Positions 8,301 through 24,073 of a stretch of DNA of 64,000 nt are shown here, piece by piece. Made by a program: the position numbers and the translations under genes. This DNA is from Octopus bimaculoides (lineage: Eukaryota). The stretch lies in contig NC_069000.1 in assembly GCF_001194135.2 (NCBI RefSeq), positions 9,698,901 through 9,762,900 on the forward strand, in the 5' to 3' direction. The notes beneath the pieces were generated by a model. That model was given only the letters and a program-made list of their open reading frames with translations, did no database searches and had not been told where the DNA came from. The first letter of the stretch is position 1. Each line of letters begins with the position of its first letter.

Positions 8301-11300
8301 ATGGACTCCATCGTAGAGCAGGTTCCACAAATATCATTGAACTTCATGGTGAGTTGCTTCATCTTTTCTTTTCTGTATCTTTCTCATTTCAAAAAATTTA
8401 TTTCATAGCACATAAATGTTTTCTGGAATCAATAAAATAAAGCCTCAGTTAGGTACTGAGATCTTTGGTATCAACTAAATTCCTCTCCTTAAAATTGCTG
8501 GCTCTGTGCCTATATGAAAAACAATTATTTCATATTAATTTACCGAACAGATGTACTTATGAAAAATCTCTATTTGATTGAAATGTTTCTTCTTTGTTTA
8601 CTAAAGGTAACTTGTTCAAGACAAGGTGTACTAACTGTGGAGAAGTTGCTGTGAACAATGACAGCCCAATTTGTGAGGCTTTGGCTAACAGAGGGTAAGT
8701 AACTTACTTTTTTGTTATGGAAACCTATAAGTGTCAGTTATATATTGCATGTAAAATGATAAGTTGTAAACAAGAGAAACTAAACCATACCATTTATAAG
8801 CCTACGTGGTCAGAATTGAAGATATAACTCCTTCCATCACCACCACCACCTCATTCAATTAACTATAAACATTTTCATGTAATTTTCCCAGCTAAAGCAA
8901 GGGTTAGCCCACAACAGTTCATTATGGTTCTCCTTTGGTGATAGGATTTTCTGGTCAGATGCCTTTCCTGTTGCTAACTGTTTTAGTCACCTCATACAAC
9001 ATATCAAGATAACCACATGGAAATCTTAATTTCAAGTTTTGGCACAAGACCAGCAATTTCAGGCCAGGGGATTAAGTCGATTACATCAACTCCAGTACTC
9101 AATCCTCGTGTCAGGTGCAGAAACAAATGTTGTAATTTGCAATTGAAACCTGTTTTTTGCCAACTTTGTGTTATGTATGTATGTATATGTGTGTGTCTTC
9201 TATAGCTCCAGGTTGACCAAAGTCTCAAGTGGATTTGGTTAATGAAAACTGAAAGAAGTCTATTGTGTGTGTGGTAGTGTCTCCTTGCCTTGACATCATG
9301 TGATAGTTGGAAGTAAATGTCTCTATCATACAAGCTGGATCCTTCATTTCCAGTCTTCCATGAAAGGCATGTCTGGTGATGAGGCAACTGTTACCTCACT
9401 TGGAAATGGGTGAGGGTTTGCAACATGAAGATGTTCCGGTTATAGAAAATCCAGCTCTACAAAATTCTGCCTGATCCATGCGAGTGCATGGTAAACCAAT
9501 GATATATATATACACACACTCCAAATCTCTATATATCTATCCATCCTGACTGTAAAACATTGTTCAAAATTAAGTCAGTTTAAATCAAATACTATTCTGT
9601 CCAAGTTTTGATGATATTTGATGAAGTATTGATGATATTTGCTTTTCCTTTGCATGTAGATCTCCTGATCCATCTGCAGAAGATGCTAGAATCCCTAAAG
9701 AACTTCTTCCACGGTAAGTCAATTGAATTATGAGTTTTTGATGTTGTTTAACCCCAGCGACTGAAACAAAAAGTAAAAGATATGTATAATAAAGAATTCT
9801 GTATTTGTGGTTTATCTTTTTTTAGGTGCAAAACATCCAGTTGTAAAGGTCTTCTTCGTCCTCATGTCGTTTGGTTTGGAGAAAGTCTTGACCAGAATGT
9901 CTTGCTGCAAACTGAAGAGGTTCTGGATTCATGTGATCTTTGCTTGGTTGTAAGTATTGCTCTTTTTTTTTTATGTGAAACTTCATCATCATCGTTTAAC
10001 GTCTGCTTTCTATGCTAGCATGGGTTGGACGATTTGACTGAGGACTGGTGAACCAGATGGCTACACCATGCTCCAATCTGATTGGGTAGAGTTTCTACAG
10101 CTGGATGCCCTTCCTAACGCCAACTACTCCCAGTGTATAGGGGGTGCTTTTACGTGCCACCGGCTGCTGTACTGTCCTGGTTGATCAATAGACAAGCTCG
10201 TTTGTTTTAACTTTTAAAATTGGATATTATTGATCATAAGGTTGTCTAATGAGAGCTACTGGGGTTAAGCGTGATCAAAAGTGCTTAAGTCCAAATCATT
10301 GTCTTTGTTTAATCCTTTAGCATTCAGATTACTTTGTTAAATGTAATGCTTTTTCATTCTCATTGTTTTTATAGATGTTTTCAATCTAGTTTGGATTCTT
10401 TGCCATGTTGATTGCAAAGAATTCAAATTTGATGGCAACGAATCCAAACTAGATCGAAAACATCTATAATTAAACATACATTATCTCATACCTTTCAAAA
10501 TTTGATGCTATGATTGTATATTTTTAGAATGGCATTTGAAGGGTAGGCGTGAGAGGCTGGATAGAACATAAAACAGGTACACATTTGGGTTGGATATGGC
10601 AGTGTTTAAATGCTAAAGGGTTAAGGCATAATATCATCATCATCATCGTTTAACGTCTGCTTGCCATGCTAGCATGGGTTGGACGATTTGACTGAGGACT
10701 GGTGAAACCGGATGGCAACACCAGGCTCCAGTCTGATTTGGCAGAGTTTCTACAGCTGGATGCCCTTCCTAACGCCAACCACTCAGAGAGTGTAGTGGGT
10801 GCTTTTACGTGTCACCCGCACGAAAACGGCCACGCTCGAAATGGTGTCTTTTATGTGCCACCCGCACAAGCCAGTCCAGGGGCACTGGCAACGATCTCGC
10901 TCGAAAATCCTACAGGATCCAGTCAGGCGGTACTGGCAACGGCCACGCTCAAAATGGTGCATCTCATGTGCCACCCGCACAAGAACCAGTCCAGGGGCAC
11001 TGGCAACGATCTTACTTGGCTTGCCGGGTCTTCTCACGCACAGCCCATTTCCAATCCATGAATAAATAATCCTGGTTACAAAATGCTTCCTTTCCTTGAC
11101 AGAAGGGTGTAATTTGAGGGAGATTTGTCTATTCATAGATGTATGAATACCACATTAAATATATATTTTCTCTTTCTTCCAGGTTGGTACTTCATCAATT
11201 GTCTACCCAGCTGCCATGTATGCACCAATGCTAGCAGGCCGAGGAATTCCTGTTGCAGAATTCAACACTGAAGAGACTCCAGCCACAAACTCACTAGGGT

Positions 11301-11800
11301 GAGAACCCTGTTTCTAGTTCTTGTGATTTATTGAATGTACAGCTAAGGAGAGAGAAGATATGAAATAGGGGCCCATGCCAGTGTCATGTAAAAAGCACTC
11401 AGTACACTGTAAAGTGGTTAGCGTTAGGAAGGGCATCCAGCCTTAGAAACCATGTCAAAACCTTAGGTCAGTCCTGATGTACTTTTGACCATCTCTTCTT
11501 TTATTCAGACCTAGCCTGTTTAGGACTACCTTACCCACTGTCTTATTTTCTTTTTGTGATGTATGTGATTTGAGGGAGATTTGACTGTTATTTCTTGCAT
11601 GTCAAATGACCATGTAAACTTGTATTACCATATCTTGTATACCATTGCTGAAATTAAATACCAAATATATATTTTGTTCATTATATCCTTTTTTTCTTTC
11701 TTTCTTTCTTTCTTATCTCTGCAGCTTTCACTTTGAAGGTCCAGCTGGATCTACCTTGCCACCAGCCCTGGCAAAACATGAAAATGAACCAGAAGACTAA
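5389..11800 (+). CDS. SIRT5: NAD-dependent protein deacylase sirtuin-5 (class III sirtuin), complete, 315 aa with N-terminal mitochondrial transit-like peptide
   Basis: Exons 5389-5493, 6596-6754, 6995-7093, 8222-8348, 8607-8694, 9660-9713, 9826-9949, 11183-11298 and 11725-11800, totalling 948 nt in frame. Motifs: [23 protein letters not shown] (the Tyr/Arg pair for succinyl/malonyl specificity), [11 protein letters not shown], CxxC twice, [19 protein letters not shown]. Exon 1 ([35 protein letters not shown]) is basic with no acidic residues; it is less certain than exons 2-9. Confidence 0.96.
6192..6281. repeat. Short inverted-repeat element with TTAGGG-like core in SIRT5 intron 1
   Basis: AGGTAAAGAATACGTACGCCACCCGTTT pairs with AAACGGGTGGTGTGCGTATTCTTTACCT around TTAGGTTTAGGGTTAGG. 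No TSD was found. Confidence 0.7.
10313..10620. mobile_element. piggyBac-like MITE (TTAA target, TIR CCCTTTAGCATT)
   Basis: TTAA|TCCTTTAGCATT ... AATGCTAAAGGG|TTAA. Related copies at 27494-27714 (complete) and about 26040-26196 (3' part). Confidence 0.75.
10633..11055 (-). mobile_element. Abundant retroposon family with (GAT)n tail (SINE or LINE 3' end); longest copy, with an internal duplication
   Basis: Shared core GCATGGGTTGGACGATTTGACTGAGG...CAGCTGGATGCCCTTCCTAACGCC. Other copies at about 1530-1820, 2465-2645, 9985-10165, 14024-14128, 18962-19520 (split), 35690-36016, 39205-39520 and 40645-40912. Confidence 0.8.
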
Positions 11801-13675
11801 GCTGAAAGAACACAACCACCACTACTATCTTTGTAGGAGAGTTGGTTAAGTTCATTTGCCAGAAGGGTAGAACTCTTTCAGATCTTGCCTTCAGCCCAAG
11901 GGATAACAATACTCATATTTCTGTTTCCACTTTCACATGAAGTACAACAGCCAGAATTGTTATCTGCTCTCATTCCTCACAGCAAATGAATTTATCCAAC
12001 TCCTCTTTTGAGTAATTTTTGCCAACATAGACCAGAACCAATTTCCTTGAATCTTGAATTTGTTCTCTCTTCAACAGCCGCATTTATAATTTATTTAAGG
12101 CTATCTCTCTCTCTCTCTTTTTCTTTCGCTCGCTCTCTCTCTCTCCTTTCTCTCTCTCTATATATATCTAATCTAAGGTCCAATCTGTATATGTATCAAT
12201 AAGAATTTAAGATCCTATATTTATAATTTAAGGATATGTATAGTAAGTATCTGAAATTGCAAACAAAGCATGAAGTGTTTCGGTAAGAAATTATTTCTTT
12301 CTGCAATATAAATGACATTTTTAATATATATGAACTGAAAAAAAAAACAACCAACCAATTCTTGAAATAATGTAATAAATATTTTTTGGAAAGAATCTTG
12401 ACTTTTATTAATGAATTCCAAGAAAATATGGTTTATTTGCCCAGAATTCAAACATGCAGCTATCTGAATTTTATTTTATTTTTTCCCAAATAAATATCTT
12501 TTGAAATATTTTTTACAAATTTTTCCCATTTTTGCATAATTGTGTCTCCTAGATTTGGAGTGATTTGGAGAATAGAACGCCTTTTCTATTTCAGATGTTT
12601 TAGAATAAAATTGCATAACATAAGTATCTGTACACTGTAAGGGTTTCCTCCGTGGAAACTAAAATGAATTGAGAAATAGGGATGAAATTTGGGGACAACG
12701 GGGTAGAAGAAAAAAAATTACCAGTATGAATACAGCACTGAATTGAAACAGTTTTATCTTCCATTTATGGCTGATTCATAAAATAGCAGTTGAAAGGTAA
12801 ATAGTTTCCACAGTTCTGAAAGCAGTACAGACCAGTTTTCTTAATGTTCTTAGCATCATAAAGGTAGCTGAACAGTAATCTATAGATCTTTACATTTCTT
12901 TTTTACAAAGTACATGTCTTTATTTACAAACGTATCTATTTTCACTGATCTATAGAATCAGTGTACTGTACTAAGATGTCCAGAGTTGGAACAAGAGATT
13001 GGCATGACCGTGTGGACACCAGTGATTTGGTGCAGCTGAATGGACATTCAACTGGTTTCGGTGACTCTACGTTTTGGCACTGGAGGCAAATGAATGTGTG
13101 CTGAAATATACACACATATATATAGAGAGAGAGAAGGGGGTACTTTACAATTTATTTGTTGAACACAACATAAACACTTTCCCTCTCTCCATATACATAA
13201 ACAGAAAATTAGAAACATTAAAACGTCTGATGATGAATCAGTCAGTATCAAATTGGCAAAGCCAAATATGTGGCACCAAAACGGCCATGCCAAAACACTT
13301 CTTCGTATCTGTCCAGAGTTTATATTCAAGTAGGTGCCGTTCCTTTTAAATGTTGGCATTGCCCAACAAAACATTTTGATTTATATCAACAGTAGATATG
13401 TTGAAAAATAGGAAAGAATCTGGGAGAGAGAGAGAGACAACAGTACCATTTGAAAGAGCACCACTTGAAATGTGTATAAAATATATATATATATATATAT
13501 ATATAAATTAAATAAAAAACAAACAAACAAACAGGATTCCTTTCCACATGAAGTGGTTGGGTATCACTTAAGGCAGCCAGATAGCATTGGTATGATAAAA
13601 CCAAGAGGGGATAAAGGAAAACAAAAATTCAAAATTCTCACATTTTCTGTTTTCTTGAAAATGTGTTTTAAAACA

Positions 13676-14385
13676 TTACTTTGTCTTCTTTGATTTTCGT
13701 GAATGCTTATTTTCATTCTGCTTGAGGAATTAGAAAAAAANNNNNNNNNNNNNNNNNNNNNNNNNNNNNNNNNNNNNNNNNNNNNNNNNNNNNNNNNNNN
13801 NNNNNNNNTGAGGTTGAATGTGTTTATTTGTTTTTTAATCTCTACTGGTGGATTAAATTTTTTGCAGGCATTTATGTTCCTGTAACTTAGCGGTTTGGCA
13901 AAAAGACAGACAGAATAAGTATCAGGCTTAAAAAGCAAAAAAGTACTGGGGTCAATTCATTTGACTAAAAATTCTTCAAGGCAATGCCCCAGCATGGCCA
14001 CAGTCTAATGACTGAAACAAGTATCATCATCATCATCATCATCATCATCGTTTAACGTCCGCTTTCCATGCTAGCATGGGTTGGACGATTTGACTGAGGA
14101 CTGGTGAAACCGGATGGCAACACCAGGCTATATATATATATATATACACACATACGTAAAAACAGTCTTGCTTAGAAATACTTACCTTTACCTTGATATA
14201 ACCATGTTGATCACAGATTTGCCTGGCGCAATTATTGATGAATTTGAAACGGTCTGGTCCCAAGAGAATCCCTCCAAACCAACGAGAGATGACCACAATA
14301 AGGTTTGTTGCCTCAATTATCTATAAGTATAAAACAAACTACAATGAATAAATGGAGGAAAGGAAGATAAGAATTACTATTATCA

Positions 14386-14423
<38 letters not shown>

Positions 14424-17400
14424 GTGGCACAACATGGGTGCTGGTACGAGGTACAACCACAAGTGCTTTACACCACAGGAAGGATTGATCTTAACACTTC
14501 TGCTGCACTCTTCAGTACAGCCAGATGCCAGGTGTCTCAGTTCTTTATTGTCATCTCACCTGAAAGGTTCAGCTACCTGGGGTCATCCTTCAGTACTTCA
14601 TCCCATGTCAGTAATTTCGGGGAGAGGATAAGTTGATTAAAGTACCAGCACTAAACTGGTACTTATTTTATCAATCCCAAAAGGATGAAAGATAAAGGTC
14701 AACCTTGGCAAAATTTGAACTCAGAATGTAAAGATGGGTAAAATACCTCAAAGCATTTTGCCCCACATGCTAACGATTCTGCCAGCTTGCTGCTGCCTTA
14801 ATAATAATAATAATCATGATAATAATGATAATAGTAATAATAATAATAAAATATCTGTGTCTGTGTGTGTGTGTGTGTGGCATGACTGTTTATCTCTACA
14901 ATGGTGTAAATGGACATAGACACATACATGTGCATATGTGAGTTTATGTCTGTGCTTGTGTTTCTAAAAATCTGGCAGTTTTCTATGTGGCATCTCTCTT
15001 TGCTCTGTAACCTAGCAATTTGACAAACAGAGATTAATACCTGTCCTATACCCTTGAAGGTGGCATCCCTAGAATGGCTGCAATCCAATGAATGAAACTA
15101 GGCAAAAAGAATAAAGGAATAAAAGCAGAATCTATGAAGGGAAGTAATGTTGGCTACAACAATGGACCGGTACAAAGTGTATCTAGAACTGACATGGCAT
15201 TTACCTGGAGCAGGTGGAGCAACCGAGAGCCAGCATGCACTTCACGATCATCGTCACAGCCCTGGATTACAATATTACTATCACCGGGTAGAATCCTAGA
15301 AATACAGAATTTTGTTTTCAGTTTACATGCATATATGATGTAGGCATATAGAGGGGTCGATAAGGTGGGTGTGTACGCGTTGTGGCAGACACCCTGCCCA
15401 GGTGAGAAGTAGGCTGGTCCACTACTAATAAATAGTGGACTGACACAGTCAGTAATGTCAGTCAGCAAGGCTTGCTGTTCGGGCCAGTCCCACAGAGATG
15501 ATGAAACACATAGTCATAATGCAGGATATAACAGTGGCAATGAGGATTCGTAACTCACATAGCCACTGATATGTAATAGCAGCACATAACGGTAGCGACA
15601 AAGATTCATAGCTCACACAGCCACTGATGTGTAGTAGCAGGACAAAGCAGTGGCAATGAGGATTTGTAGCTCACAGATATGTAGTAGCAGGAAATATCAG
15701 TGGTGACGAGGATGCCTCCCACTGTATAACGGTGTCATTATAACAATTGTAACGAGGTTACGAACACTCGTAGGAGTGTCAAAATGGAAGACCTACGTTC
15801 AAGAACAATGAAAGAAAGTTTGAAGAATTTGAACTCTAACACAGAATTGAACTACACACGGTGAAAAGTAATATACACACAGTGAAAAATGTCTGATAAA
15901 ACTGGATTTCTACACAGAACTGAACAACACACGGTGAAAAATAATTCTGTGTGGAAAAAATAATAATAATAACAATGAGTGTTCGAAGGATTTATAAGTC
16001 AGGTCGCTATATGTAGTGGCGCTACAAGTTATAATATAGACTTGGTACTACCTGCGGTATTTTGAAAAAAAAAACAAAACTATGGTTCTGTGTGGAACAA
16101 AAAATAATTCTGGTAAGAAAAAGAAAATGAAAAAGAATTAATGATACACTTGAAGTGAGTCATACCAGAAGATTTCAAACCTAAGCAGATATCATCTGTT
16201 GAAATTGAAAACAAACCAGTTGCTATGAAAGTTAAAACGGACAAAGAAAACGTTAGCCATTTTGTGATTGAGGATACTAAACGAGTTCTCCTTGAAAAGA
16301 CTCCAGATGAAATGTCGATGGAAGTGACTAGTGAAGAACATGTAGAAAATTCTGAAGTTAGAGAATCTGAGCCATCTGTTACAGGAAAATTCCTTCTATG
16401 GAAAATGCTTCATTGAAGGATCGTTCTAATGCAAAAACTTCAAAAGATAATGAAAGTTTGTAGGTAACTGATCCAGTGTAATGAAAGGAACAAGCTTTAG
16501 AAAAAGAAATGAAGAAATGCACACACACACACATATCGATACATATACTTTAACCAAACACCAAGCGTCCTTACCGGTATGCCATGATATTATGGGTTGC
16601 ATTTGCTACTTTCTTATTCTCAAGAAGTTTCTCCATAACCATGTTTACCTAGAAAAGCATTAAAACAGAATCAATCTAAAACCCTCAAATTTAAATAAAT
16701 AATCTGAGACAGAAGAAATTCAATAAAATATTTTGAAAAATATACAAAAAAAAATATGATGGCAATGCAGTAGAGTGACTCAATGGACAAGAGTTCAAAC
16801 CTGAACTAAATATTATTGTTTTAGGTATATTTCCAGACTGGCAGTGGTTGGATGGATCTGTTCCATCACAGTGTCTTTGCCACTTATGCAGTGCTTTGCT
16901 AATGAATACACTAGAGAAAATCAACAGAGTTTGTTGTTGTATATGTCATGTTATTTTTTGTATAATAAACTGGCACTCCATCTGTTAAGATGATGAGGGT
17001 TCCAGTTGATCCAATCAACTGCACAACTTGCTTGTGAAATTAATGAGCAAGTGGCTGAACACTCCACAGACATACACACTTTTAATGTAGTTCTCAGGAA
17101 GATTCAGCAGGACACAGGATATGACAAGGCTGGCCCCTTTGAATTACTGGTACAACGCATTTTAGCCAGCTGAATGGACTGGAGCAACATGAAATAAAGT
17201 GTCTTGCTCTAGGATGCAGTGTGCTACCAGGAATTGAACTCACGACTTCACAACCCTGGGCCACTAAGTTATGTATCTTCACTTTTCATATAATATTTTA
17301 TGGCTGGATGGATGCCTTTCCAACTACTTTACAGCATGGATTGAGTATATTCTCTTCTGTGACCAATGTGAGATAGGTTGTCTGCCAGAAGTAGAACACC

Positions 17401-20400
17401 TGTTATTATTTGATGTTAAAGCGGTGAGCTGGCAGAAATGTTTAGTAGTATTTCATATGCTGCTATGTTCTGAGTTCAAACTCCACCAAGGTTGACTTTG
17501 CCTTTCATCCTTTTGGGGGTCAATAAATTAAGTACCGGTTGCGTACTGGTACTCAATTTATCGACCCTGAAGGAAGAAAAAAACAAAATCAACTTGAATG
17601 GGATTTGAACTCATAACATAAGCTGGAAGAAATGCTTCAAAGCATTTTGTCCAGCATGCTAACAATTCTGCCAGTCACGAAGCAATGCAATATAATAAAT
17701 CTTTCTTACTTGGCACTTGTGTGTGACAGGGGCTAAGTGAGCCTGAAATGTACTGCGTTTCTCTGTCATAGGTTCTCCATGGTGTATCACAGGGCATTCA
17801 ACAGCTGCAAGAAGAAGAAGAATTAGCAAATTGACTCCAGTACTTATTCTTTGGAAACCTAGTACTTATTCTATTGGTCTCTTTTGCTGAACCGCTAAGA
17901 AGTCAAGCAAATTATTTTATAAAATAAAATAAATAAAGCAATAAGGTGTACCTTCTACATTTTTGGTATTCACAAAATCTTCTTCAATATCGGCTTCAAT
18001 ATCAAAGTTGAAATCCTTAGTTTCTTCGGGCTCTTCTAAAGTAACATTCTTTAACTGGACATCAGGGTATGTATGAACTGGAATGATTACAATCCAAAAG
18101 GGGTCATAAGTTAACCTTCATAAGCACAGAGTGACAGAAGGATCAGAAAGGACAAAAGCAGAACAAATATAAAACTGCCCCTTTTCGTTTAAGATATAGC
18201 AATTATCCTGCATTTCTGCCTCTAGATAAAGTATGATTACTATGGATAACAAGAAAGGATACACTACTGTTCTCTGTACTGTTCAGTAAAGAACAATACT
18301 GCTTGTATAACCCTTTATTTTGTACTCTTAAATAAGAGTACAGGCTTTATGAAAGGTGGAAGAAGCACAAATGTCCTGAGAAAATAGTTGGGCATTGAAG
18401 GCATTAGACATTATGTACAGGAGAAGCAGTTGTGATGTGACTGGATGAAAAGGATAAGTACTAAAGACTGTTACAGATGATGATGATGATGACAGTCAAG
18501 ATGATGATAATGATGGTGATGGTTTGGATGCTATTTCTATATTGAGGCTCCCTTACTTAGATAAAAATAAGAGTAAAAAAACAAGAGAAATCTTAGTGGT
18601 AATTTTGGAAAATGCTATGAAGTCACAATATAAAACACACCACGATTGGCTCATATATGAACAATCTGAATAAGGCCGAATATACTTACTTGGAGTACCA
18701 TCAGTCTTTTGTGCTAAGATATTTCGAATTTCTTCTACCCATTTGAAAATTATACATTCACCTAAGTTATCTCTGAAAGGAAATAGAACAACATTGTAAG
18801 CTATAAAGATGGAAACCAACGCCTGGTTGGCACATAGACGAATTTCCATCAACACAAAAAGGTCACCCATTCAACTACATGTCTGCTTTAATGAAAATCA
18901 TCTAGACATAATGAGAGAATAACAGAATAACTTCTGGCCAAATACTTGCTAGCTTAAGCATCACCATAATCCTTTAACGTCTGTTTTCCACGCTGGTATG
19001 GGTTGGATGGTTTGACTGGAGCTGGAGAGCTGCACCAGGCTCCAGTCATCCTTTCTTGTTATCCATAGTAAGTGCACTTTATCTGGAGGCAGAAATCAAG
19101 GCCTTTGCCTTAACCAGAAATGCAGTCTAGTAGCCATGTCTTAAACAAAAAGGGGCAGTTTTATATTCATTCTGCTTTTGTGTCCATTCCGATCTTTCTA
19201 TCACTCTGTGCGTTTGTGAAGGTTAACTTATGGCCCCTTCTGGATTCTTATCATTCTATTTCCAGTTCATATATACCCTGATGTCCAGCTAAAGAATGAT
19301 ACTTTAGAAGAAACTAAGGATTTCAACATTAATATTGAAGCTGATATTGAAGAAGATTTTGGCTTCTAGCTGGATGCCTTTCCTAAAGCCAAACACTTTA
19401 CAGAATATAATGGGTGTCTTTTACATGTCACCAATATGGGTACCTTTTACATGCTGCTGGAATGAGTGCTTTATACATGTCATATGCATGGGGTGTCTTT
19501 TATGTACCATGACCACCGTTCACTTTACTCACCCCCCACCATTTCTCATACAAGGCCAATCTTCCTCCCAGACTAACCTACCATATAATGTACAATTCAA
19601 ACAAATCTCCTGTAGCCAAGGGTCTGGTATCCTACACATGTCAACTATTGTCTCTGACAGGTTTCCCCAAGACAGAAATATTTATACTTACAAATATATT
19701 TCTTGTAATTGGTTTTCAATCTGTGTTCGTTCTTCTCCTCTTATCCAGGGACAACTGAAAAGAAGAAAACAGTGAAGCTGATGATGATTATGAAGAAATA
19801 CAGACTACAATTATTGCTCTGTTTACTAATTATAAAGTAGTGTTCTTCTGTTATGTGGTCAGATCAATCAGGAAGTAAATGAAATTAATATAAAAATAGT
19901 AATGATATGTATTTATGTAATCAACATATTACTGTATGTATTTACGTACATACATACAGTCATGTGTCGATATATGAGTTAATTTGCTTGTAAAGTGAAA
20001 ACTCATAAACGGAAAATTAAACTTGTGAAAGCTTGTAAACCTGGGGTCTCGTAAAGTGGGTCCTCATAAAGTGAGGTATTACTGTATGTATGAATGTATG
20101 TATGTATGTGTGTATATATGCATATGTGACTGTGTGTGTGTGTGTGTGTGCGTGTGCGTGACTGTGTGTGTATGTGAATTATTTTCCTCTTAAATATATT
20201 ATCATATATGATTAATTGTCTTACTCTTCTGTATGTGAAGGAGTTTCTACATGGTTGTTAGATTTGCTGGAAATGTCCCTTAAACGACAACCAACTACCA
20301 CTTTAAAAGAAAAAAAAAAAAGGACACACTGGATGATGTAGTCTGGGGTACACTGTGCTTGAAAAATGAAATGGGATGGTCATGACTGGAATGACTTAGA

Positions 20401-22259
20401 TCATTGGTTTACTCAATTAGGGTCGATTTGGAACTGAACAACAAGATTTTCACACAAACACATTCACTTGATAAAAGTCAAATATTTACCTGAGCTGGTA
20501 CTGTGGCGGGGATACGCTTGGGTAATCCTCTGGCATTTGAACCTGGAAACAATGCAAGAAAAATGTTTAGTTAATGAATTGTGCAATTCTTTTACAGAAA
20601 ATGAAACAACATGCAGCAGAATGACATGTAGAGAGAAATTCTAGACCAGCAATTTTAAAGAGTGTGTGTGTTAGTCAATCATATCGATTCCAATGCTTGA
20701 GCGGTACTTTATTCCTTCAACCCGAAATGGATTGAAGCAAAATTGGTCTTGACAGTATTTGAACTTAGAATATAAAAAGCCAGGAGAAATGCTAATACAC
20801 ATTTTATCCGATGTGCTAATCATTCTACCAGTCCACCACCATAATAATAATAACAACAATAAGAATACAGTGAATGGTTTGAGATGGGGAACCATATTTA
20901 AATAGGCAAAAAATATCTTCTGGATAAATTATTAGCTTTGCCATTTTAATTAATGAAAGCTTGATAATCTTCAAATCAAATTATATGAAAAAATTCGTTT
21001 TTTTTTTACTTGCAAGCCCAGTTTCCACTTTGGGTCATCTTGCCCGTCTGTAATCTGGATGGAGTAAATACGGGAAGTGCTGTCCACGACACGCCAGTCA
21101 TCTCCATAGATTGCAGTCAGAGCTTCTATTTCATCAACCTGAAAATGTTTAATAAATGAGGTAAAAAAACATCTACAAATATGTGTTTATAGTTTTGATC
21201 ATAGAAAAAAGTAAAAAAAAAAAGTAGTTTTTGGTATTCAGCTCAGTCAATGAATTTTAGATATTCATATAGCTTGTATTCATGTACAGAACCTGCTGTT
21301 TCAAGATGATCAAAGAAACAATTTTTCTTCTTGGGGAGAATGCTAGTTTATCATCAGGAGTTTTTCATCTAAATCAGTGTTTCTCAACCGTTTTTTGCCT
21401 ACGGACCCCTTTGATTCCTGTTTTACTTAGACGGGCCCTTTTGATGTTGGGGTACACACACACACATATACATATATACGACGGGCTTCTTTCAGGTTCC
21501 GTCTATCAAATCCACTCACAAGGCTTTGGTTGGTCCGAGGCTATAGTAAAAGACACTCGCCCAAGGTGCCACGCAGTGGGACTGAACCTAGAACCATGCG
21601 GTTGGTAAGCAAGCTACTTACCACTCCTGCGCATATAAAAACGAAAGAAAAACATATATATATATATATCAAAAGCNNNNNNNNNNTTTTTTTTTTTTTT
21701 TTTTTTTTGTCTTCTGAACTTCAGACGTTCATAACAAAAATTCAAAGAGTGCTGTTTTTAAGGGCATCAAAAGAAAAAAGAGAGAGGATTTATTGAATAC
21801 AAACTTAAACGCATAAATGCCAAATTTTTTTTTTTACAAAATATAATCTTTGTAACAACGATCTTTGAGAGTAACAAGTTTGAAATCTCAGGTCAGCTCT
21901 GACCGAGCAGGCCCGTGGCGAACGGCGTTCCTGACATGGTCATTTCATGTCTTTTATATATCAAGAACTACACAATCCAACGTCTTCCATTAAAACGGAT
22001 GGACGTAATTTAAGAACGATCTGGCTATTATATCTAGCAGATTGAATGACCACACAGAAGCCACACTGTCTGCTCTCGAATAACATGTTTGTTACATTCG
22101 GCATGTCATTTTCGTTCGATATATTTATATTAATTTAATTCTTCAATACTCAACGAAGACATAGACATATCATATATCAATAAACATAAAGAAAAAGGTG
22201 AAGCCAAAAATGACAGTCAAACTCACCTGTCGTGTCAAATTATCTTCGATCACGTCCAT
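13676..22259 (-). CDS. IMPACT: Protein IMPACT (RWD domain plus UPF0029 ancient domain; GCN1/GCN2 regulator), complete, 307 aa
   Basis: Exons 22259-22227, 21138-21010, 20542-20490, 19754-19692, 18772-18690, 18077-17952, 17804-17710, 16648-16575, 15295-15205, 14320-14186 and 13717-13676, totalling 924 nt in frame with GT-AG junctions. Motifs: DEIEALTAIYG, MPEDYPSVSPP, CPW (RWD), KRSTFQAHL, ATHNIMAYR, SRWFGGILLGPDRFKFINNCAR, and a Lys-rich C-terminus. Confidence 0.95.
15521..15715. repeat. Degenerate tandem repeat of about 58 bp (about 3.5 units), hairpin-bearing
   Basis: Units begin GCAG...CAGTGGC...GGATT..TA.CTCAC..AGCCACTGAT; CAGTGGC/GCCACTG forms an internal inverted repeat. Confidence 0.75.
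19048..19360 (+). pseudogene. Inverted duplicate of IMPACT exon 6 and its upstream intron (antisense pseudo-exon in IMPACT intron 4)
   Basis: Reverse-complement match to 17974-18260, including the acceptor ccag|TTCAT and the sequence encoding HIYPDVQLKNDTLEETKDFNINIEADIEEDF; 9-nt deletion relative to the native exon. Confidence 0.9.
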
Positions 22260-22620
22260 GACACACAAGTTGCTGTAGTGTCAAGTGTGGCGGTGAACAT
22301 TTCCAAATTGTACCTTCTGAATAAATTCATTAGTTTGCCTTGGAGACATTTAAGATTAATTCCTTCTTCTGCATTTCACTACCTTCAGCTTAAAGCTGGG
22401 GGAAAATCATAAAAAGAAAACGAATAAACAATACTTAAGAAGAACAAAAATTAGAATTTAACACGCAATGAAACTGCATAAGACAAAAATTACAAGCTGT
22501 AGTTTTAGCAAATAAAACGGTGTTGGTGGATAGTTAACAACAGGAAAAATAACATCGCTAACAAAATTAACACTAAAATTGGGGCACTTAACCAGTTTGT
22601 CACGGAAAGCTAAAGTAAGT
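22260..22620. promoter_or_regulatory. Putative bidirectional promoter / 5' region shared by IMPACT (-) and copine (+)
   Basis: IMPACT ATG at 22259. A plus-strand consensus donor AAA|GTAAGT at 22614/22615 could end a non-coding copine first exon; the copine ATG exon begins with a splice acceptor, so an upstream exon is required. Confidence 0.4.
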
Positions 22621-22841
22621 ATTAGATGTCTTCTCTCTATTATATTTATGTGTACATTTACATAGGTCGTTTCTTTTTTTTTATTTTAAAAAGTTTCTAT
22701 GCCGTTTTGTAGCTTTTTTTTCTTCTGTGGTTTTGCCAAAGCTTGGCACACCCATTTGGCAGACCGAAATTCTTTCCCCGACAAAGATATTTCGATCACA
22801 TTTAATCTCATGATATGTGCGTATATGTTGGAGTTTTCACT

Positions 22842-22915
<74 letters not shown>

Positions 22916-24073
22916 AATGGATGTGTTATAATGCCATTCCACATACACGAAAACAACCATACCAACAATCCAACATACCTCCACCATCAGCTGCCTCACA
23001 GATAAGCACTATATGAACTAATGTACGTTTATTGTGTATGCGTGCGCGTGTACCCCTTGATCGCACTGAGTTTTACATGTTATGTCATAATAAATTGTAA
23101 CGAAAATGTCTCTTTCGTCTCGATATACATATGAGACATTAAAAGCGCCAATGTATTCGCGCGCGCGGACACACATGCATAGAGAGAAAGAGAGAGAGAG
23201 AGAGAGAAAGTTCTATTACAGTTGATATGTTATAAGTACGATACACAAGTGCTAAAACGTTGTAAATAAATCGAGTTTGAAACAAATCGTAGGGAATATG
23301 AGAACCAGATATTATAGGAATATGTGAATCTTGGCGAAGAGTAATAAACAACAGCAGCTTAAGTTACATTATAAAACTGTGTCAAGAAAATAAGGTTCTC
23401 AGAAGAGGTGGATTCTTAATACATGTGAAAATGCCAATTCTCTATTTAAGCTGTAGCCAAGCCAGCAAGACTCTGGTACACACTAAAGTTACGAAGAAAT
23501 GACAGATCTTTAAAAATCAGGGCAGTAAAAAACACCGGAGGGGGTTTATTCCGTTAAGAAGTATCAGTCTTTTGGATTAAGCTACCCAATGAAATAGTGA
23601 ACTCAACCAAATTAAACTAAAATACCGCAGTAATAACAAGAATGTGTCTCTAGTATGATCAATCAGGTGTAGTCTATTAGTCAACAGATACAAAGTTTCT
23701 CAGTAAACTGTATAAATAAATAATTCAATACATACGTTTAGGAAGTAAATACCTATAATCATTAAGAAATAAAATAATGGGGAAAAAAAGCAACAGAAAA
23801 TAGGTGGATCTTTTTGAATTGACAGGCAGCACTTGTTTTCTTAACGAAACACTTTCAAACTTGGGATACTGGTAGAATGTGTCATATAAAACATCTTTTT
23901 CTCTTAGCCTTCTAAACAAAAATTTCTACATTGCAAGTTATTTCATGTTAAAGTTGTCGTATTTTTGTAGATAGACATCAGTGATTGGTTGAAATTACCG
24001 AAATACGACAATTTTTTTACATGAAATAACTTCGAATGCAAAAATTTTTATCTGCTCTATAATACAAAATATA

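What the first reader, a model, noticed from the sequence alone, without database searches (positions are those of the whole stretch)
17952..19360. Inverted copy of IMPACT exon 6 inside the same gene could fold the pre-mRNA into a long hairpin
Seen: 19048-19360 is a reverse-complement copy (roughly 85% identical by eye) of 17974-18260, which covers most of exon 6, its 3' splice site and about 180 nt of upstream intron. The copy splits a (GAT)-tail retroposon in two, with GATTT microhomology at the right junction. Inference: it is a local templated insertion. In the IMPACT pre-mRNA the two arms can form about 300 bp of dsRNA that loops out exon 5 and masks the exon 6 branch point and acceptor. 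Established: such exon-intron duplexes are ADAR substrates and alter splicing, and coleoids recode extensively by A-to-I editing. Exon 6 (126 nt, symmetric phase 1-1) can be skipped in frame and encodes the acidic linker between the RWD and ancient domains. This is a candidate newly born editing-complementary sequence.
Basis: partly seen in the sequence, partly recalled or inferred. Interest (0 to 1): 0.75.

Follow-up and report, generated by a model that had tools for sequence, protein, structure and literature searches.

The report
Old inverted exon copy in octopus IMPACT
An intron of the octopus IMPACT gene holds a backwards copy of the start of exon 6 that could fold the unspliced RNA into a long hairpin, but the copy is tens of millions of years old, looks neutral, and nothing yet shows that it does anything.

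Summary
Window 19048-19361 is a reverse-complement copy of 17973-18260 (E 7e-68; about 90% identical in aligned columns, 77% counting gaps). The source covers 105 of the 126 nt of IMPACT exon 6, its 3' splice site and 183 nt of intron 5. The gene is Octopus bimaculoides IMPACT on the minus strand; my spliced model matches the RefSeq protein exactly. The copy lies in intron 4 and splits a SINE. It has no target-site duplication, and GATTT(T)G microhomology marks the right junction, which fits a templated break-repair insertion. In silico the arms form about 260 bp of duplex (-394 kcal/mol) that loops out exon 5 and covers the exon 6 acceptor.

"Newly born" is wrong. The same insertion, with the same junction and the same 9-nt deletion, is present in O. 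sinensis and O. vulgaris, so it predates a 13-34 My split. There it is decaying: a 397-bp repeat splits it in both species, and a 1.2-kb deletion removes most of its intron half in O. vulgaris.

I found no sign of selection:
- no compensatory columns;
- the arms evolve no slower than the loop;
- exon 6 synonymous sites are not constrained.

Editing and exon skipping could not be tested. Best reading: a neutral relic with real double-stranded RNA potential.

The parts
17973..18260 (-). Source arm: the last 183 nt of IMPACT intron 5 (18078-18260, with the polypyrimidine tract, the likely branch point and the 3' splice site) plus the first 105 nt of exon 6 (17973-18077).
19048..19361 (+). Inverted copy of the source arm. 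Its sense-equivalent strand is +, so it is antisense within the minus-strand IMPACT pre-mRNA. It lies in intron 4, 275 nt upstream of exon 5.
17952..18077 (-). IMPACT exon 6: 126 nt, phase 1-1. It encodes IHTYPDVQLKNVTLEEPEETKDFNFDIEADIEEDFVNTKNVE (13 acidic residues of 42), the linker between the RWD and UPF0029 domains.
18690..18772 (-). IMPACT exon 5 (83 nt), enclosed in the 787-nt loop of the predicted hairpin.
19692..19754 (-). IMPACT exon 4. With exon 5 it defines intron 4, which holds the copy.
18960..19047 (-). Tail-side half of the host SINE, with a degenerate (CAT)n at 18960-18975 on +. It ends ...CACCAGGCTCCAGTC at the left junction.
19362..19560 (-). Head-side half of the host SINE. 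It resumes GCTTCTAGCTGGATGCC... after the copy.
19355..19361 (.). Right junction. GATTTTG can be read either as the end of the exon 6 copy (GAAGAAGATTTTG|TG in the source) or as the SINE (TGATTTGGC), giving 5-7 nt of microhomology. The junction is identical in all three Octopus species.

Best explanation
This is a fixed, old, microhomology-joined templated insertion. [quoted passage not shown] That template lies 0.8-1.3 kb away on the same chromosome, and it was copied in inverted orientation. A 3' end primed on GATTT(T)G in exon 6, synthesised back through the acceptor into intron 5, and was then ligated to the other break end without homology (inferred).

Because both arms are transcribed in one pre-mRNA, they can pair into an imperfect duplex of about 260 bp. 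Exon 5 sits in the loop, and the duplex buries the exon 6 branch-point region, polypyrimidine tract, acceptor and 105 exonic nt (shown in silico only).

The most likely consequence is the one known for intronic inverted-repeat pairs. ADAR would edit unspliced transcripts promiscuously, with some spill-over onto exon 6 adenosines and at most a minor effect on splicing (inferred).

Since its origin the element has evolved like neutral intron. Both arms accumulate uncompensated substitutions and indels, and one lineage has split it and partly deleted it (shown).
For: The repeat and its coordinates.

Gene model: with an exact match to RefSeq O. bimaculoides IMPACT X1/X2.

Insertion into a SINE: the insertion point is empty in intact SINE relatives, about 1 nt of SINE sequence is missing at the break, and there is no target-site duplication, poly(A) or terminal repeat.

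A single origin: the right junction and the 9-nt deletion are identical in O. bimaculoides, O. sinensis and O. vulgaris. There is no inverted copy in Argonauta hians.

Hairpin: the minimum-energy fold of 19400..17940 pairs the arms end to end. The arms alone give 260 intermolecular bp at -394 kcal/mol, with perfect runs of 40, 26, 25, 19 and 19 bp. A duplex of about 100 bp over the exon part survives in all three species.

Neutrality:
- Of 279 four-way aligned columns, none shows a species-specific shared state.
- bimaculoides-sinensis divergence is 0.040 in the arms, 0.045 in the loop introns (Fisher p = 0.77) and 0.056 in the local background (p = 0.21).
- Exon 6 pS is 0.164 against 0.120 for the rest of the CDS.
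- The O. bimaculoides source arm has 25-, 6- and 2-nt deletions.
- A 397-bp repeat sits inside the copy in O. sinensis and O. vulgaris, and a 1.2-kb deletion removes most of the copy's intron half in O. vulgaris.

The RefSeq isoforms of both annotated species differ only by one Q. None skips exon 6.
Against: No RNA evidence of any kind was available, so duplex formation in vivo, editing and splicing effects are predictions only.

The hairpin span (18094-19377) is the slowest-evolving of all 1145-column intronic windows across the aligned locus: 0.042 against a mean of 0.079. A naive binomial test of the arms against the locus-wide intron rate gives p = 4e-4. A weak regional constraint therefore cannot be excluded. 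Only about 7-8 of those windows are independent, and all of this DNA lies within about 450 nt of an exon.

The exon-complementary 100 bp has been retained at about 94% complementarity in all three species, while the intron half was lost in one. That pattern is what a maintained editing-complementary sequence would show too. It is also within neutral expectation: 6 differences observed against about 8.6 expected.
Confidence: 0.7

Rival explanations
1. The copy is a functional editing-complementary sequence. It is maintained because it directs ADAR to recode specific adenosines in the acidic linker encoded by exon 6.
For: A near-perfect exon-part duplex of about 100 bp is kept in three species, with perfect runs of up to 53 bp in O. 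sinensis. In the predicted duplex, 34 of the 48 exon 6 adenosines are A-U paired with the copy, and 26 would recode if edited. The hairpin span is the least diverged intronic window of the locus. Coleoids edit coding sequence extensively (PMC9068888).
Against: There are no compensatory columns. Exon 6 synonymous divergence is not reduced. The arms evolve no slower than the loop. The copy carries an uncorrected 9-nt bulge inside the exon part and was split by a 397-bp repeat in one lineage. No IMPACT entry was found in the editing supplements that are held; this is weak evidence because those tables are partial.
Confidence: 0.12
2. The hairpin acts mainly on splicing. By sequestering the exon 6 acceptor it promotes in-frame skipping of exon 6. 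Alternatively, by bringing the ends of exon 5 together it promotes an exon 5 circular RNA, as complementary flanking introns are known to do.
For: The duplex covers 183 nt upstream of exon 6, including the acceptor. Exon 6 is 126 nt and phase 1-1, so skipping it keeps the frame. The linker it encodes varies in length among cephalopods and other animals. The arms flank exon 5 at distances of 275 and 429 nt.
Against: RefSeq models for O. bimaculoides and O. sinensis include exon 6 in both isoforms. An 83-nt single-exon circle would be unusually small (my own knowledge). Intron 4 may be removed before the downstream arm is transcribed. No junction-read data were available.
Confidence: 0.12
3. The inverted copy is an assembly artefact, such as a chimeric or fold-back read or a mis-join.
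For: The window comes from a gapped scaffold assembly with seven N runs.
Against: The arms differ by about 10% in substitutions plus indels, whereas artefactual fold-backs are near-identical. No gap lies within 17900-19400. The same structure is present at the orthologous site in two independently sequenced and assembled species.
Confidence: 0.01
4. The fragment was acquired at the RNA level, by reverse-transcriptase template switching during SINE retroposition, or it was carried in by a SINE subfamily that had captured it.
For: The copy sits precisely inside a SINE with almost no loss of SINE sequence.
Against: On the strand where the SINE is sense, the insert is antisense to IMPACT pre-mRNA, so a switch to that pre-mRNA would give the opposite orientation. 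The SINE resumes at the position where it was interrupted, which template switching does not normally achieve. The insert contains unspliced intron. No other copy exists in the 64-kb window or in the 42-kb O. sinensis locus.
Confidence: 0.03

Closest known systems
Intronic inverted-repeat pairs (for example inverted Alu pairs in primates, and repeat-directed 'ubiquitous' editing in cephalopods, PMC9068888)
   Same: Two inverted copies of one sequence lie within about 1 kb in a single pre-mRNA. They are predicted to form an imperfect intramolecular duplex of about 300 bp, which is the classic promiscuous ADAR substrate. Such pairs can also influence nearby splicing and circularisation.
   Different: The arms are not transposable elements. 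One arm is a working exon with its acceptor, and the other is a one-off local copy of it. Only this one pair exists in the DNA examined.
Classical editing-complementary sequences (GRIA2 Q/R and R/G sites; Drosophila and cephalopod channel transcripts)
   Same: An intronic sequence is complementary to part of a coding exon in the same pre-mRNA.
   Different: Classical examples are short, strongly conserved, show constrained synonymous sites in the exon, and have demonstrated editing. Here the element lies upstream, with an intervening exon in the loop, and is far longer. It shows no conservation or covariation signal, and editing is unknown.
Templated insertions from microhomology-mediated repair (FoSTeS/MMBIR, polymerase-theta end joining, SD-MMEJ; PMC8421209, PMC7165422, PMC2943611)
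   Same: The insert is copied from a template about 1 kb away in inverted orientation, with 5-7 nt of microhomology at one junction. There is no target-site duplication, and almost no sequence is lost at the recipient site.
   Different: At about 313 nt it is longer than typical polymerase-theta inserts of a few to tens of nt. The second junction shows no microhomology. The event is ancient, so the pathway can only be inferred.
Inverted duplication of target-gene fragments as the origin of hairpin RNA genes (the model for young plant microRNA loci; my own knowledge)
   Same: An inverted duplicate of a gene fragment creates a long hairpin that is complementary to the parent gene.
   Different: Here both arms lie inside the parent gene's own transcript. 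No small-RNA evidence exists.

Membership tests
IMPACT (RWD + UPF0029/Impact_N protein) | An N-terminal RWD domain and a C-terminal UPF0029 (Impact_N) domain in one protein | tested here: met
   Pfam RWD at 10-111 (E 8.9e-24) and UPF0029 at 178-284 (E 5.8e-29), both above their cut-offs. The spliced model is contained exactly in XP_014789319/XP_014789320.
Editing-complementary sequence (site-selective A-to-I recoding) | Sequence in the same pre-mRNA that base-pairs with the edited exon | tested here: met
   In silico only: about 98 bp over exon 6 and its acceptor, within a 260-bp duplex.
Editing-complementary sequence (site-selective A-to-I recoding) | A-to-G differences between RNA and DNA at specific exonic adenosines | not testable with these tools
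   No RNA-seq access. The held supplements of two editome papers contain no IMPACT entry, and the main cephalopod editome paper is not held.
Editing-complementary sequence (site-selective A-to-I recoding) | Purifying selection on the pairing: a conserved complementary sequence, constrained synonymous sites, compensatory changes | tested here: not met
   0 compensatory columns of 279. Divergence is 0.040 in the arms against 0.045 in the loop, p = 0.77. Exon 6 pS is 0.164 against 0.120 elsewhere. Power is low because there are few substitutions.
Inverted-repeat hyper-editing substrate | Two inverted copies within a few kb in one transcription unit that form more than 100 bp of imperfect duplex | tested here: met
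   The arms are 787 nt apart and give 260 bp at -394 kcal/mol. Both lie inside the annotated IMPACT gene.
Inverted-repeat hyper-editing substrate | Clusters of A-to-G mismatches on both arms in RNA | not testable with these tools
   No RNA data.
Microhomology-mediated templated insertion | The insert is identical by descent to a nearby template, with no transposon hallmarks (target-site duplication, poly(A), terminal repeats) | tested here: met
   The template is 0.8-1.3 kb away. The host SINE is interrupted cleanly with about 1 nt missing and no duplication.
Microhomology-mediated templated insertion | Microhomology at the junctions | tested here: inconclusive
   The right junction has 5-7 nt, GATTT(T)G. 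The left junction has 0-1 nt.
Intronic complementary sequences that drive exon circularisation | Reverse-complementary matches in the two introns flanking the circularised exon | tested here: met
   The upstream arm lies in intron 4. The downstream arm begins in intron 5, 429 nt after exon 5, and runs into exon 6.
Intronic complementary sequences that drive exon circularisation | Back-splice junction reads | not testable with these tools
   No RNA data.

The most novel reading that the evidence does not exclude
The inverted copy is a working editing or splicing element that arose through a DNA-repair accident. The three Octopus species then form a natural allelic series: O. bimaculoides has a contiguous 260-bp duplex, O. 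sinensis has the duplex split by a 397-nt bulge, and O. vulgaris has only the 100-bp exon part. Editing levels or exon 6 inclusion would track duplex architecture across the series. That would be a dated, mechanistically explicit example of how an exon-targeting complementary sequence is born and then trimmed to its functional core.
Probability: 0.15. Interest if true: 0.7.

Novelty: new member of a known kind. Interest (0 to 1): 0.35.

Why it matters
How exon-targeting double-stranded structures arise is poorly documented, above all in coleoids, where recoding is massive. This locus shows one concrete route: a repair-templated inverted copy of an exon boundary. Its junctions are readable, its minimum age is known, and three species carry different states of decay. 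Public matched RNA and DNA data could therefore quickly show whether such accidental duplexes are edited, whether they affect splicing, and how much duplex is needed. If nothing is edited or skipped, the locus is a useful negative control. It would show that a duplex of about 100-260 bp over an exon can persist for tens of millions of years without consequence.

Tried and rejected
- A protein search with the exon 5+6 peptide alone found nothing. This was a false negative of the word index, because the full-length query then found the Octopus proteins containing that exact peptide.
- I searched the held supplements of two editome papers for IMPACT or its accession numbers and got no hits. The key cephalopod editome paper is not held, and a search for the temperature-dependent octopus editing study found only a review.
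- Rfam found nothing in 9500-22000. Tandem Repeats Finder found only (TGTA)n and (TG)n near 20100.
- Argonauta hians: no inverted copy and no alignable intron. It gives an upper bound on the age only if the absence is not due to loss.
- Selection on the arms: a naive binomial test looked significant. It disappeared against local background and in sliding-window ranking.
- Gene conversion between the arms is rejected: no column shows a species-specific shared state.
- Assembly artefact and reverse-transcriptase template switching are rejected; the reasons are given under the rival explanations.
- Absolute dating is only rough. The source-copy intron divergence is about 0.14. The bimaculoides-sinensis divergence is 0.04 in the arms themselves and 0.08 locus-wide. 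The age ratio is therefore about 2-4 times a split that is itself dated at 13-34 My.
Full report

Yes. Reading 17700-19700 and running repeat finder shows five collinear inverted blocks of 52-67 nt at 82-95% complementarity, joining 17973-18260 to 19048-19361. A gapped blastn of the two regions gives one alignment of 323 columns with 250 identities and 44 gap columns (E 7e-68). That is about 90% identity where bases are aligned and 77% counting gaps. A search of the whole window finds only these two copies. The seven N runs of the window all lie outside 17900-19400. Among the nine inverted pairs of at least 100 nt within 5 kb in the window, this is the third strongest and the only one that includes an exon.

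**2. What gene, and which exon?**

Minus-strand reading frames carry RWD and UPF0029 matches. Guided by a recalled vertebrate IMPACT sequence (used only as a lead), I placed nine exons, all with AG/GT boundaries. Their 281-residue translation is contained exactly in RefSeq Octopus bimaculoides IMPACT isoforms X1 and X2. The window is therefore O. bimaculoides, and the gene model is independently confirmed.

| Exon | Coordinates (minus strand) | Length | Note |
|---|---|---|---|
| 4 | 19754..19692 | 63 nt | |
| 5 | 18772..18690 | 83 nt | |
| 6 | 18077..17952 | 126 nt | phase 1-1 |
| 7 | 17804..17710 | 95 nt | |

Pfam on the full protein places RWD at residues 10-111 and UPF0029 at 178-284. Exon 6 encodes residues about 121-162. 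This is an acidic linker (13 D/E of 42) whose length varies between species. Skipping exon 6 would keep the frame; skipping exon 5, or exons 5 and 6 together, would not.

The source arm is thus 183 nt of intron 5, the acceptor, and the first 105 nt of exon 6. The copy lies in intron 4, antisense to the transcript, 275 nt upstream of exon 5.

**3. How did the copy get there?**

The flanks of the copy belong to a SINE family with several intact members in the window. Those members read ...CACCAGGCTCCAGTC TGATTTGGCAGAGTTTCTACAGCTGG... Here the element reads ...CACCAGGCTCCAGTC [313-nt copy ending GAAGAAGATTTTG] GCTTCTAGCTGG...

- There is no target-site duplication, poly(A) or terminal repeat.
- About one SINE base is missing at the break.
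- GATTT(T)G can be assigned either to exon 6 (GAAGATTTTG|TGAATACC in the source) or to the SINE (TGATTTGG).
- The left junction has no microhomology.

This is the signature of a templated insertion during break repair or a replication template switch. A 3' end primes on a microhomology about 1.3 kb away on the opposite-sense template, copies about 320 nt, and is joined back. The pathway itself is inferred; comparable mechanisms are described in PMC8421209, PMC7165422 and PMC2943611.

An RNA-level origin is unlikely. On the strand where the SINE is sense, the insert is antisense to IMPACT pre-mRNA. The SINE also resumes exactly where it was interrupted.

**4. How old is it?**

I fetched the orthologous loci of three species through their IMPACT proteins: O. 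sinensis (L001), O. vulgaris (L002) and Argonauta hians (L003).

O. sinensis and O. vulgaris both carry the copy at the same place. It has the same right junction and the same 9-nt (three-codon) deletion relative to exon 6. The event therefore predates the split of O. bimaculoides from the vulgaris/sinensis clade. That split is put at about 34 My (PMC10700109) or 13.3-33.5 My (PMC13282606).

A four-way column count gives these substitutions in the 183 intronic columns:

| Branch | Changes |
|---|---|
| Separating all sources from all copies | 17-19 |
| Each terminal branch | 2-5 |

The insertion is therefore roughly 2-4 times as old as the species split.

Argonauta has no inverted copy of its own, much shorter, exon 6.

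The O. sinensis and O. vulgaris source arms also show that the 25-, 6- and 2-nt 'insertions' in the O. bimaculoides copy are really deletions in the O. bimaculoides source arm. The 25-nt deletion lies between CAGAAAT direct repeats. The 6-nt one removes one unit of an ATTCCA tandem just upstream of the acceptor. 'Newly born' is refuted.

**5. Does the RNA fold as claimed?**

In silico, yes. The minimum-energy and centroid structures of the 1461-nt pre-mRNA segment pair the two arms from end to end, with exon 5 in the loop. Cofolding the arms alone gives 260 intermolecular pairs at -394 kcal/mol, with perfect helices of 40, 26, 25, 19 and 19 bp separated by small bulges.

In exon 6, 34 of the 48 adenosines are A-U paired with the copy. 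26 of these would recode if edited. None sits opposite a C.

The exon part of the duplex, about 100 bp, is retained in all three species.

Whether the duplex forms in vivo depends on kinetics. The upstream arm lies in intron 4 and could be spliced out before the downstream arm, about 1 kb later, is transcribed. This is reasoning, not data.

**6. Is there evidence of function?**

I looked for selection in five ways.

- **(a) Compensatory or concerted change.** None of the 279 columns shows a state shared by source and copy within a species but different between species. The roughly 20 changes since the species split are all uncompensated.
- **(b) Rate.** bimaculoides-sinensis divergence is shown in the table below. 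The naive test against the locus mean is significant (p = 4e-4). The test against the loop (p = 0.77) or the local background (p = 0.21) is not. The whole hairpin span is the slowest 1145-column window of the locus, but only about 7-8 such windows are independent, and all of this DNA is close to exons.
- **(c) Synonymous sites.** Exon 6 pS is 0.164 against 0.120 for the rest of the CDS. That is the opposite of what a constrained pairing partner would show.
- **(d) Structural integrity.** In the sinensis/vulgaris lineage a 397-bp abundant repeat landed inside the copy. Another complex insertion replaced part of the host SINE at the left junction in O. sinensis. O. vulgaris lacks 1.2 kb that include most of the copy's intron half. 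O. bimaculoides lost 33 nt from the source arm.
- **(e) Annotation.** The RefSeq isoforms in two species differ only by one glutamine at the last exon, and none skips exon 6.

| Sequence class | Divergence |
|---|---|
| Introns across the locus | 0.079 |
| Copy | 0.041 |
| Source intron arm | 0.038 |
| Loop introns between the arms | 0.045 |
| Local non-arm background | 0.056 |

Everything is compatible with neutral decay. The retention of the exon part (6 differences against about 8.6 expected) is not significantly better than neutral.

**7. What could not be tested?**

No RNA-level data were reachable. The protein collection holds no transcript-derived Octopus IMPACT variants: the cluster has five members, all from genome annotation. 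The held supplements of two editome papers have no IMPACT entry. The main cephalopod editome paper is not held. Editing, exon 6 skipping and exon 5 circularisation therefore remain predictions.

**8. Verdict**

The templated-insertion inference is well supported.

The claim of recency is wrong. The functional claim is untested, and comparative evidence lends it no support.

The element is best filed as a new example of a known kind: an intragenic inverted duplication that creates a potential double-stranded RNA. Two features are unusual. One arm is a working exon boundary. Three species carry it in three states of decay, which makes the functional question cheap to answer with existing sequencing data.

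Background from Albertin et al. 2022 (PMC9068888) frames the expectation. Cephalopod editing falls into a neural, coding class and a ubiquitous, repeat-directed class. If this duplex is edited at all, it would most plausibly behave like the second class.

Noticed in passing
L001 18359-18755 (O. sinensis); the equivalent stretch in O. vulgaris is about L002 18128-18541: A 397-bp repeat is inserted inside the inverted copy in O. sinensis and O. vulgaris but not in O. bimaculoides. The family is very abundant, with more than 15 copies at 85-90% in the 42-kb locus. ATTCT is present on both sides, which may be a target-site duplication.
   Followed up: partly
L001 18778-19986, absent between L002 18563 and 18561: O. 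vulgaris lacks 1.2 kb that O. sinensis has. The missing stretch includes about 190 nt of the copy's intron half and the tail-side half of the host SINE. The two species are said to have split only about 2.5 My ago, so this is a recent deletion, a polymorphism or an assembly difference.
   Followed up: partly
L002 10001-23720 and 23738-30934 (O. vulgaris): The O. vulgaris annotation splits IMPACT into two gene models of 165 and 134 aa. The first appears to use a GT 7 nt upstream of the normal exon 6 donor, which shifts the frame and reads LLNAL-stop in exon 7. This is probably an annotation artefact, though a minor alternative donor is possible.
   Followed up: partly
window 18094-19377: The whole hairpin span (arms plus loop) is the least diverged of the 294 overlapping 1145-column intronic windows between O. 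bimaculoides and O. sinensis across 11000-24000: 0.042 against a mean of 0.079. Closeness to exons 5 and 6 is an ordinary explanation, but the coincidence of the boundaries is unexplained.
   Followed up: partly
window 18078-18215 (source arm, intron 5): O. bimaculoides lost 25 nt (between CAGAAAT direct repeats), 6 nt (one unit of an ATTCCA tandem immediately upstream of the exon 6 acceptor) and 2 nt that O. sinensis, O. vulgaris and all the copies retain.
   Followed up: yes
window CDS compared with L001 and L002: Synonymous divergence between O. bimaculoides and O. sinensis in IMPACT (0.12-0.16) is higher than intronic divergence in the same gene (0.079).
   Followed up: no
window 14641-14762 and 17431-17553: This is the only other inverted pair of at least 100 nt within the IMPACT span (126 nt, 75%, 2.7 kb apart). 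It lies in the introns on either side of exons 8 and 9 and is probably a transposable-element pair.
   Followed up: no
L001, L002, L003 flanks: Gene order is conserved from Octopus to Argonauta. A copine gene (C2 + Copine domains) lies upstream of IMPACT on the opposite strand in O. vulgaris and Argonauta, and a SIR2-family gene lies convergent downstream in all three loci.
   Followed up: no
window about 14190 and about 13700; proteins P0121 and P0122: RefSeq isoforms X1 and X2 of IMPACT differ by a single glutamine at the last exon junction in both O. bimaculoides and O. sinensis. This looks like a NAGNAG-type tandem acceptor.
   Followed up: no
tool behaviour: The word-indexed protein search returned nothing for the 69-residue exon 5+6 peptide. 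The O. bimaculoides cluster members contain the peptide exactly, and the O. sinensis cluster representative differs from it at only three positions.
   Followed up: yes
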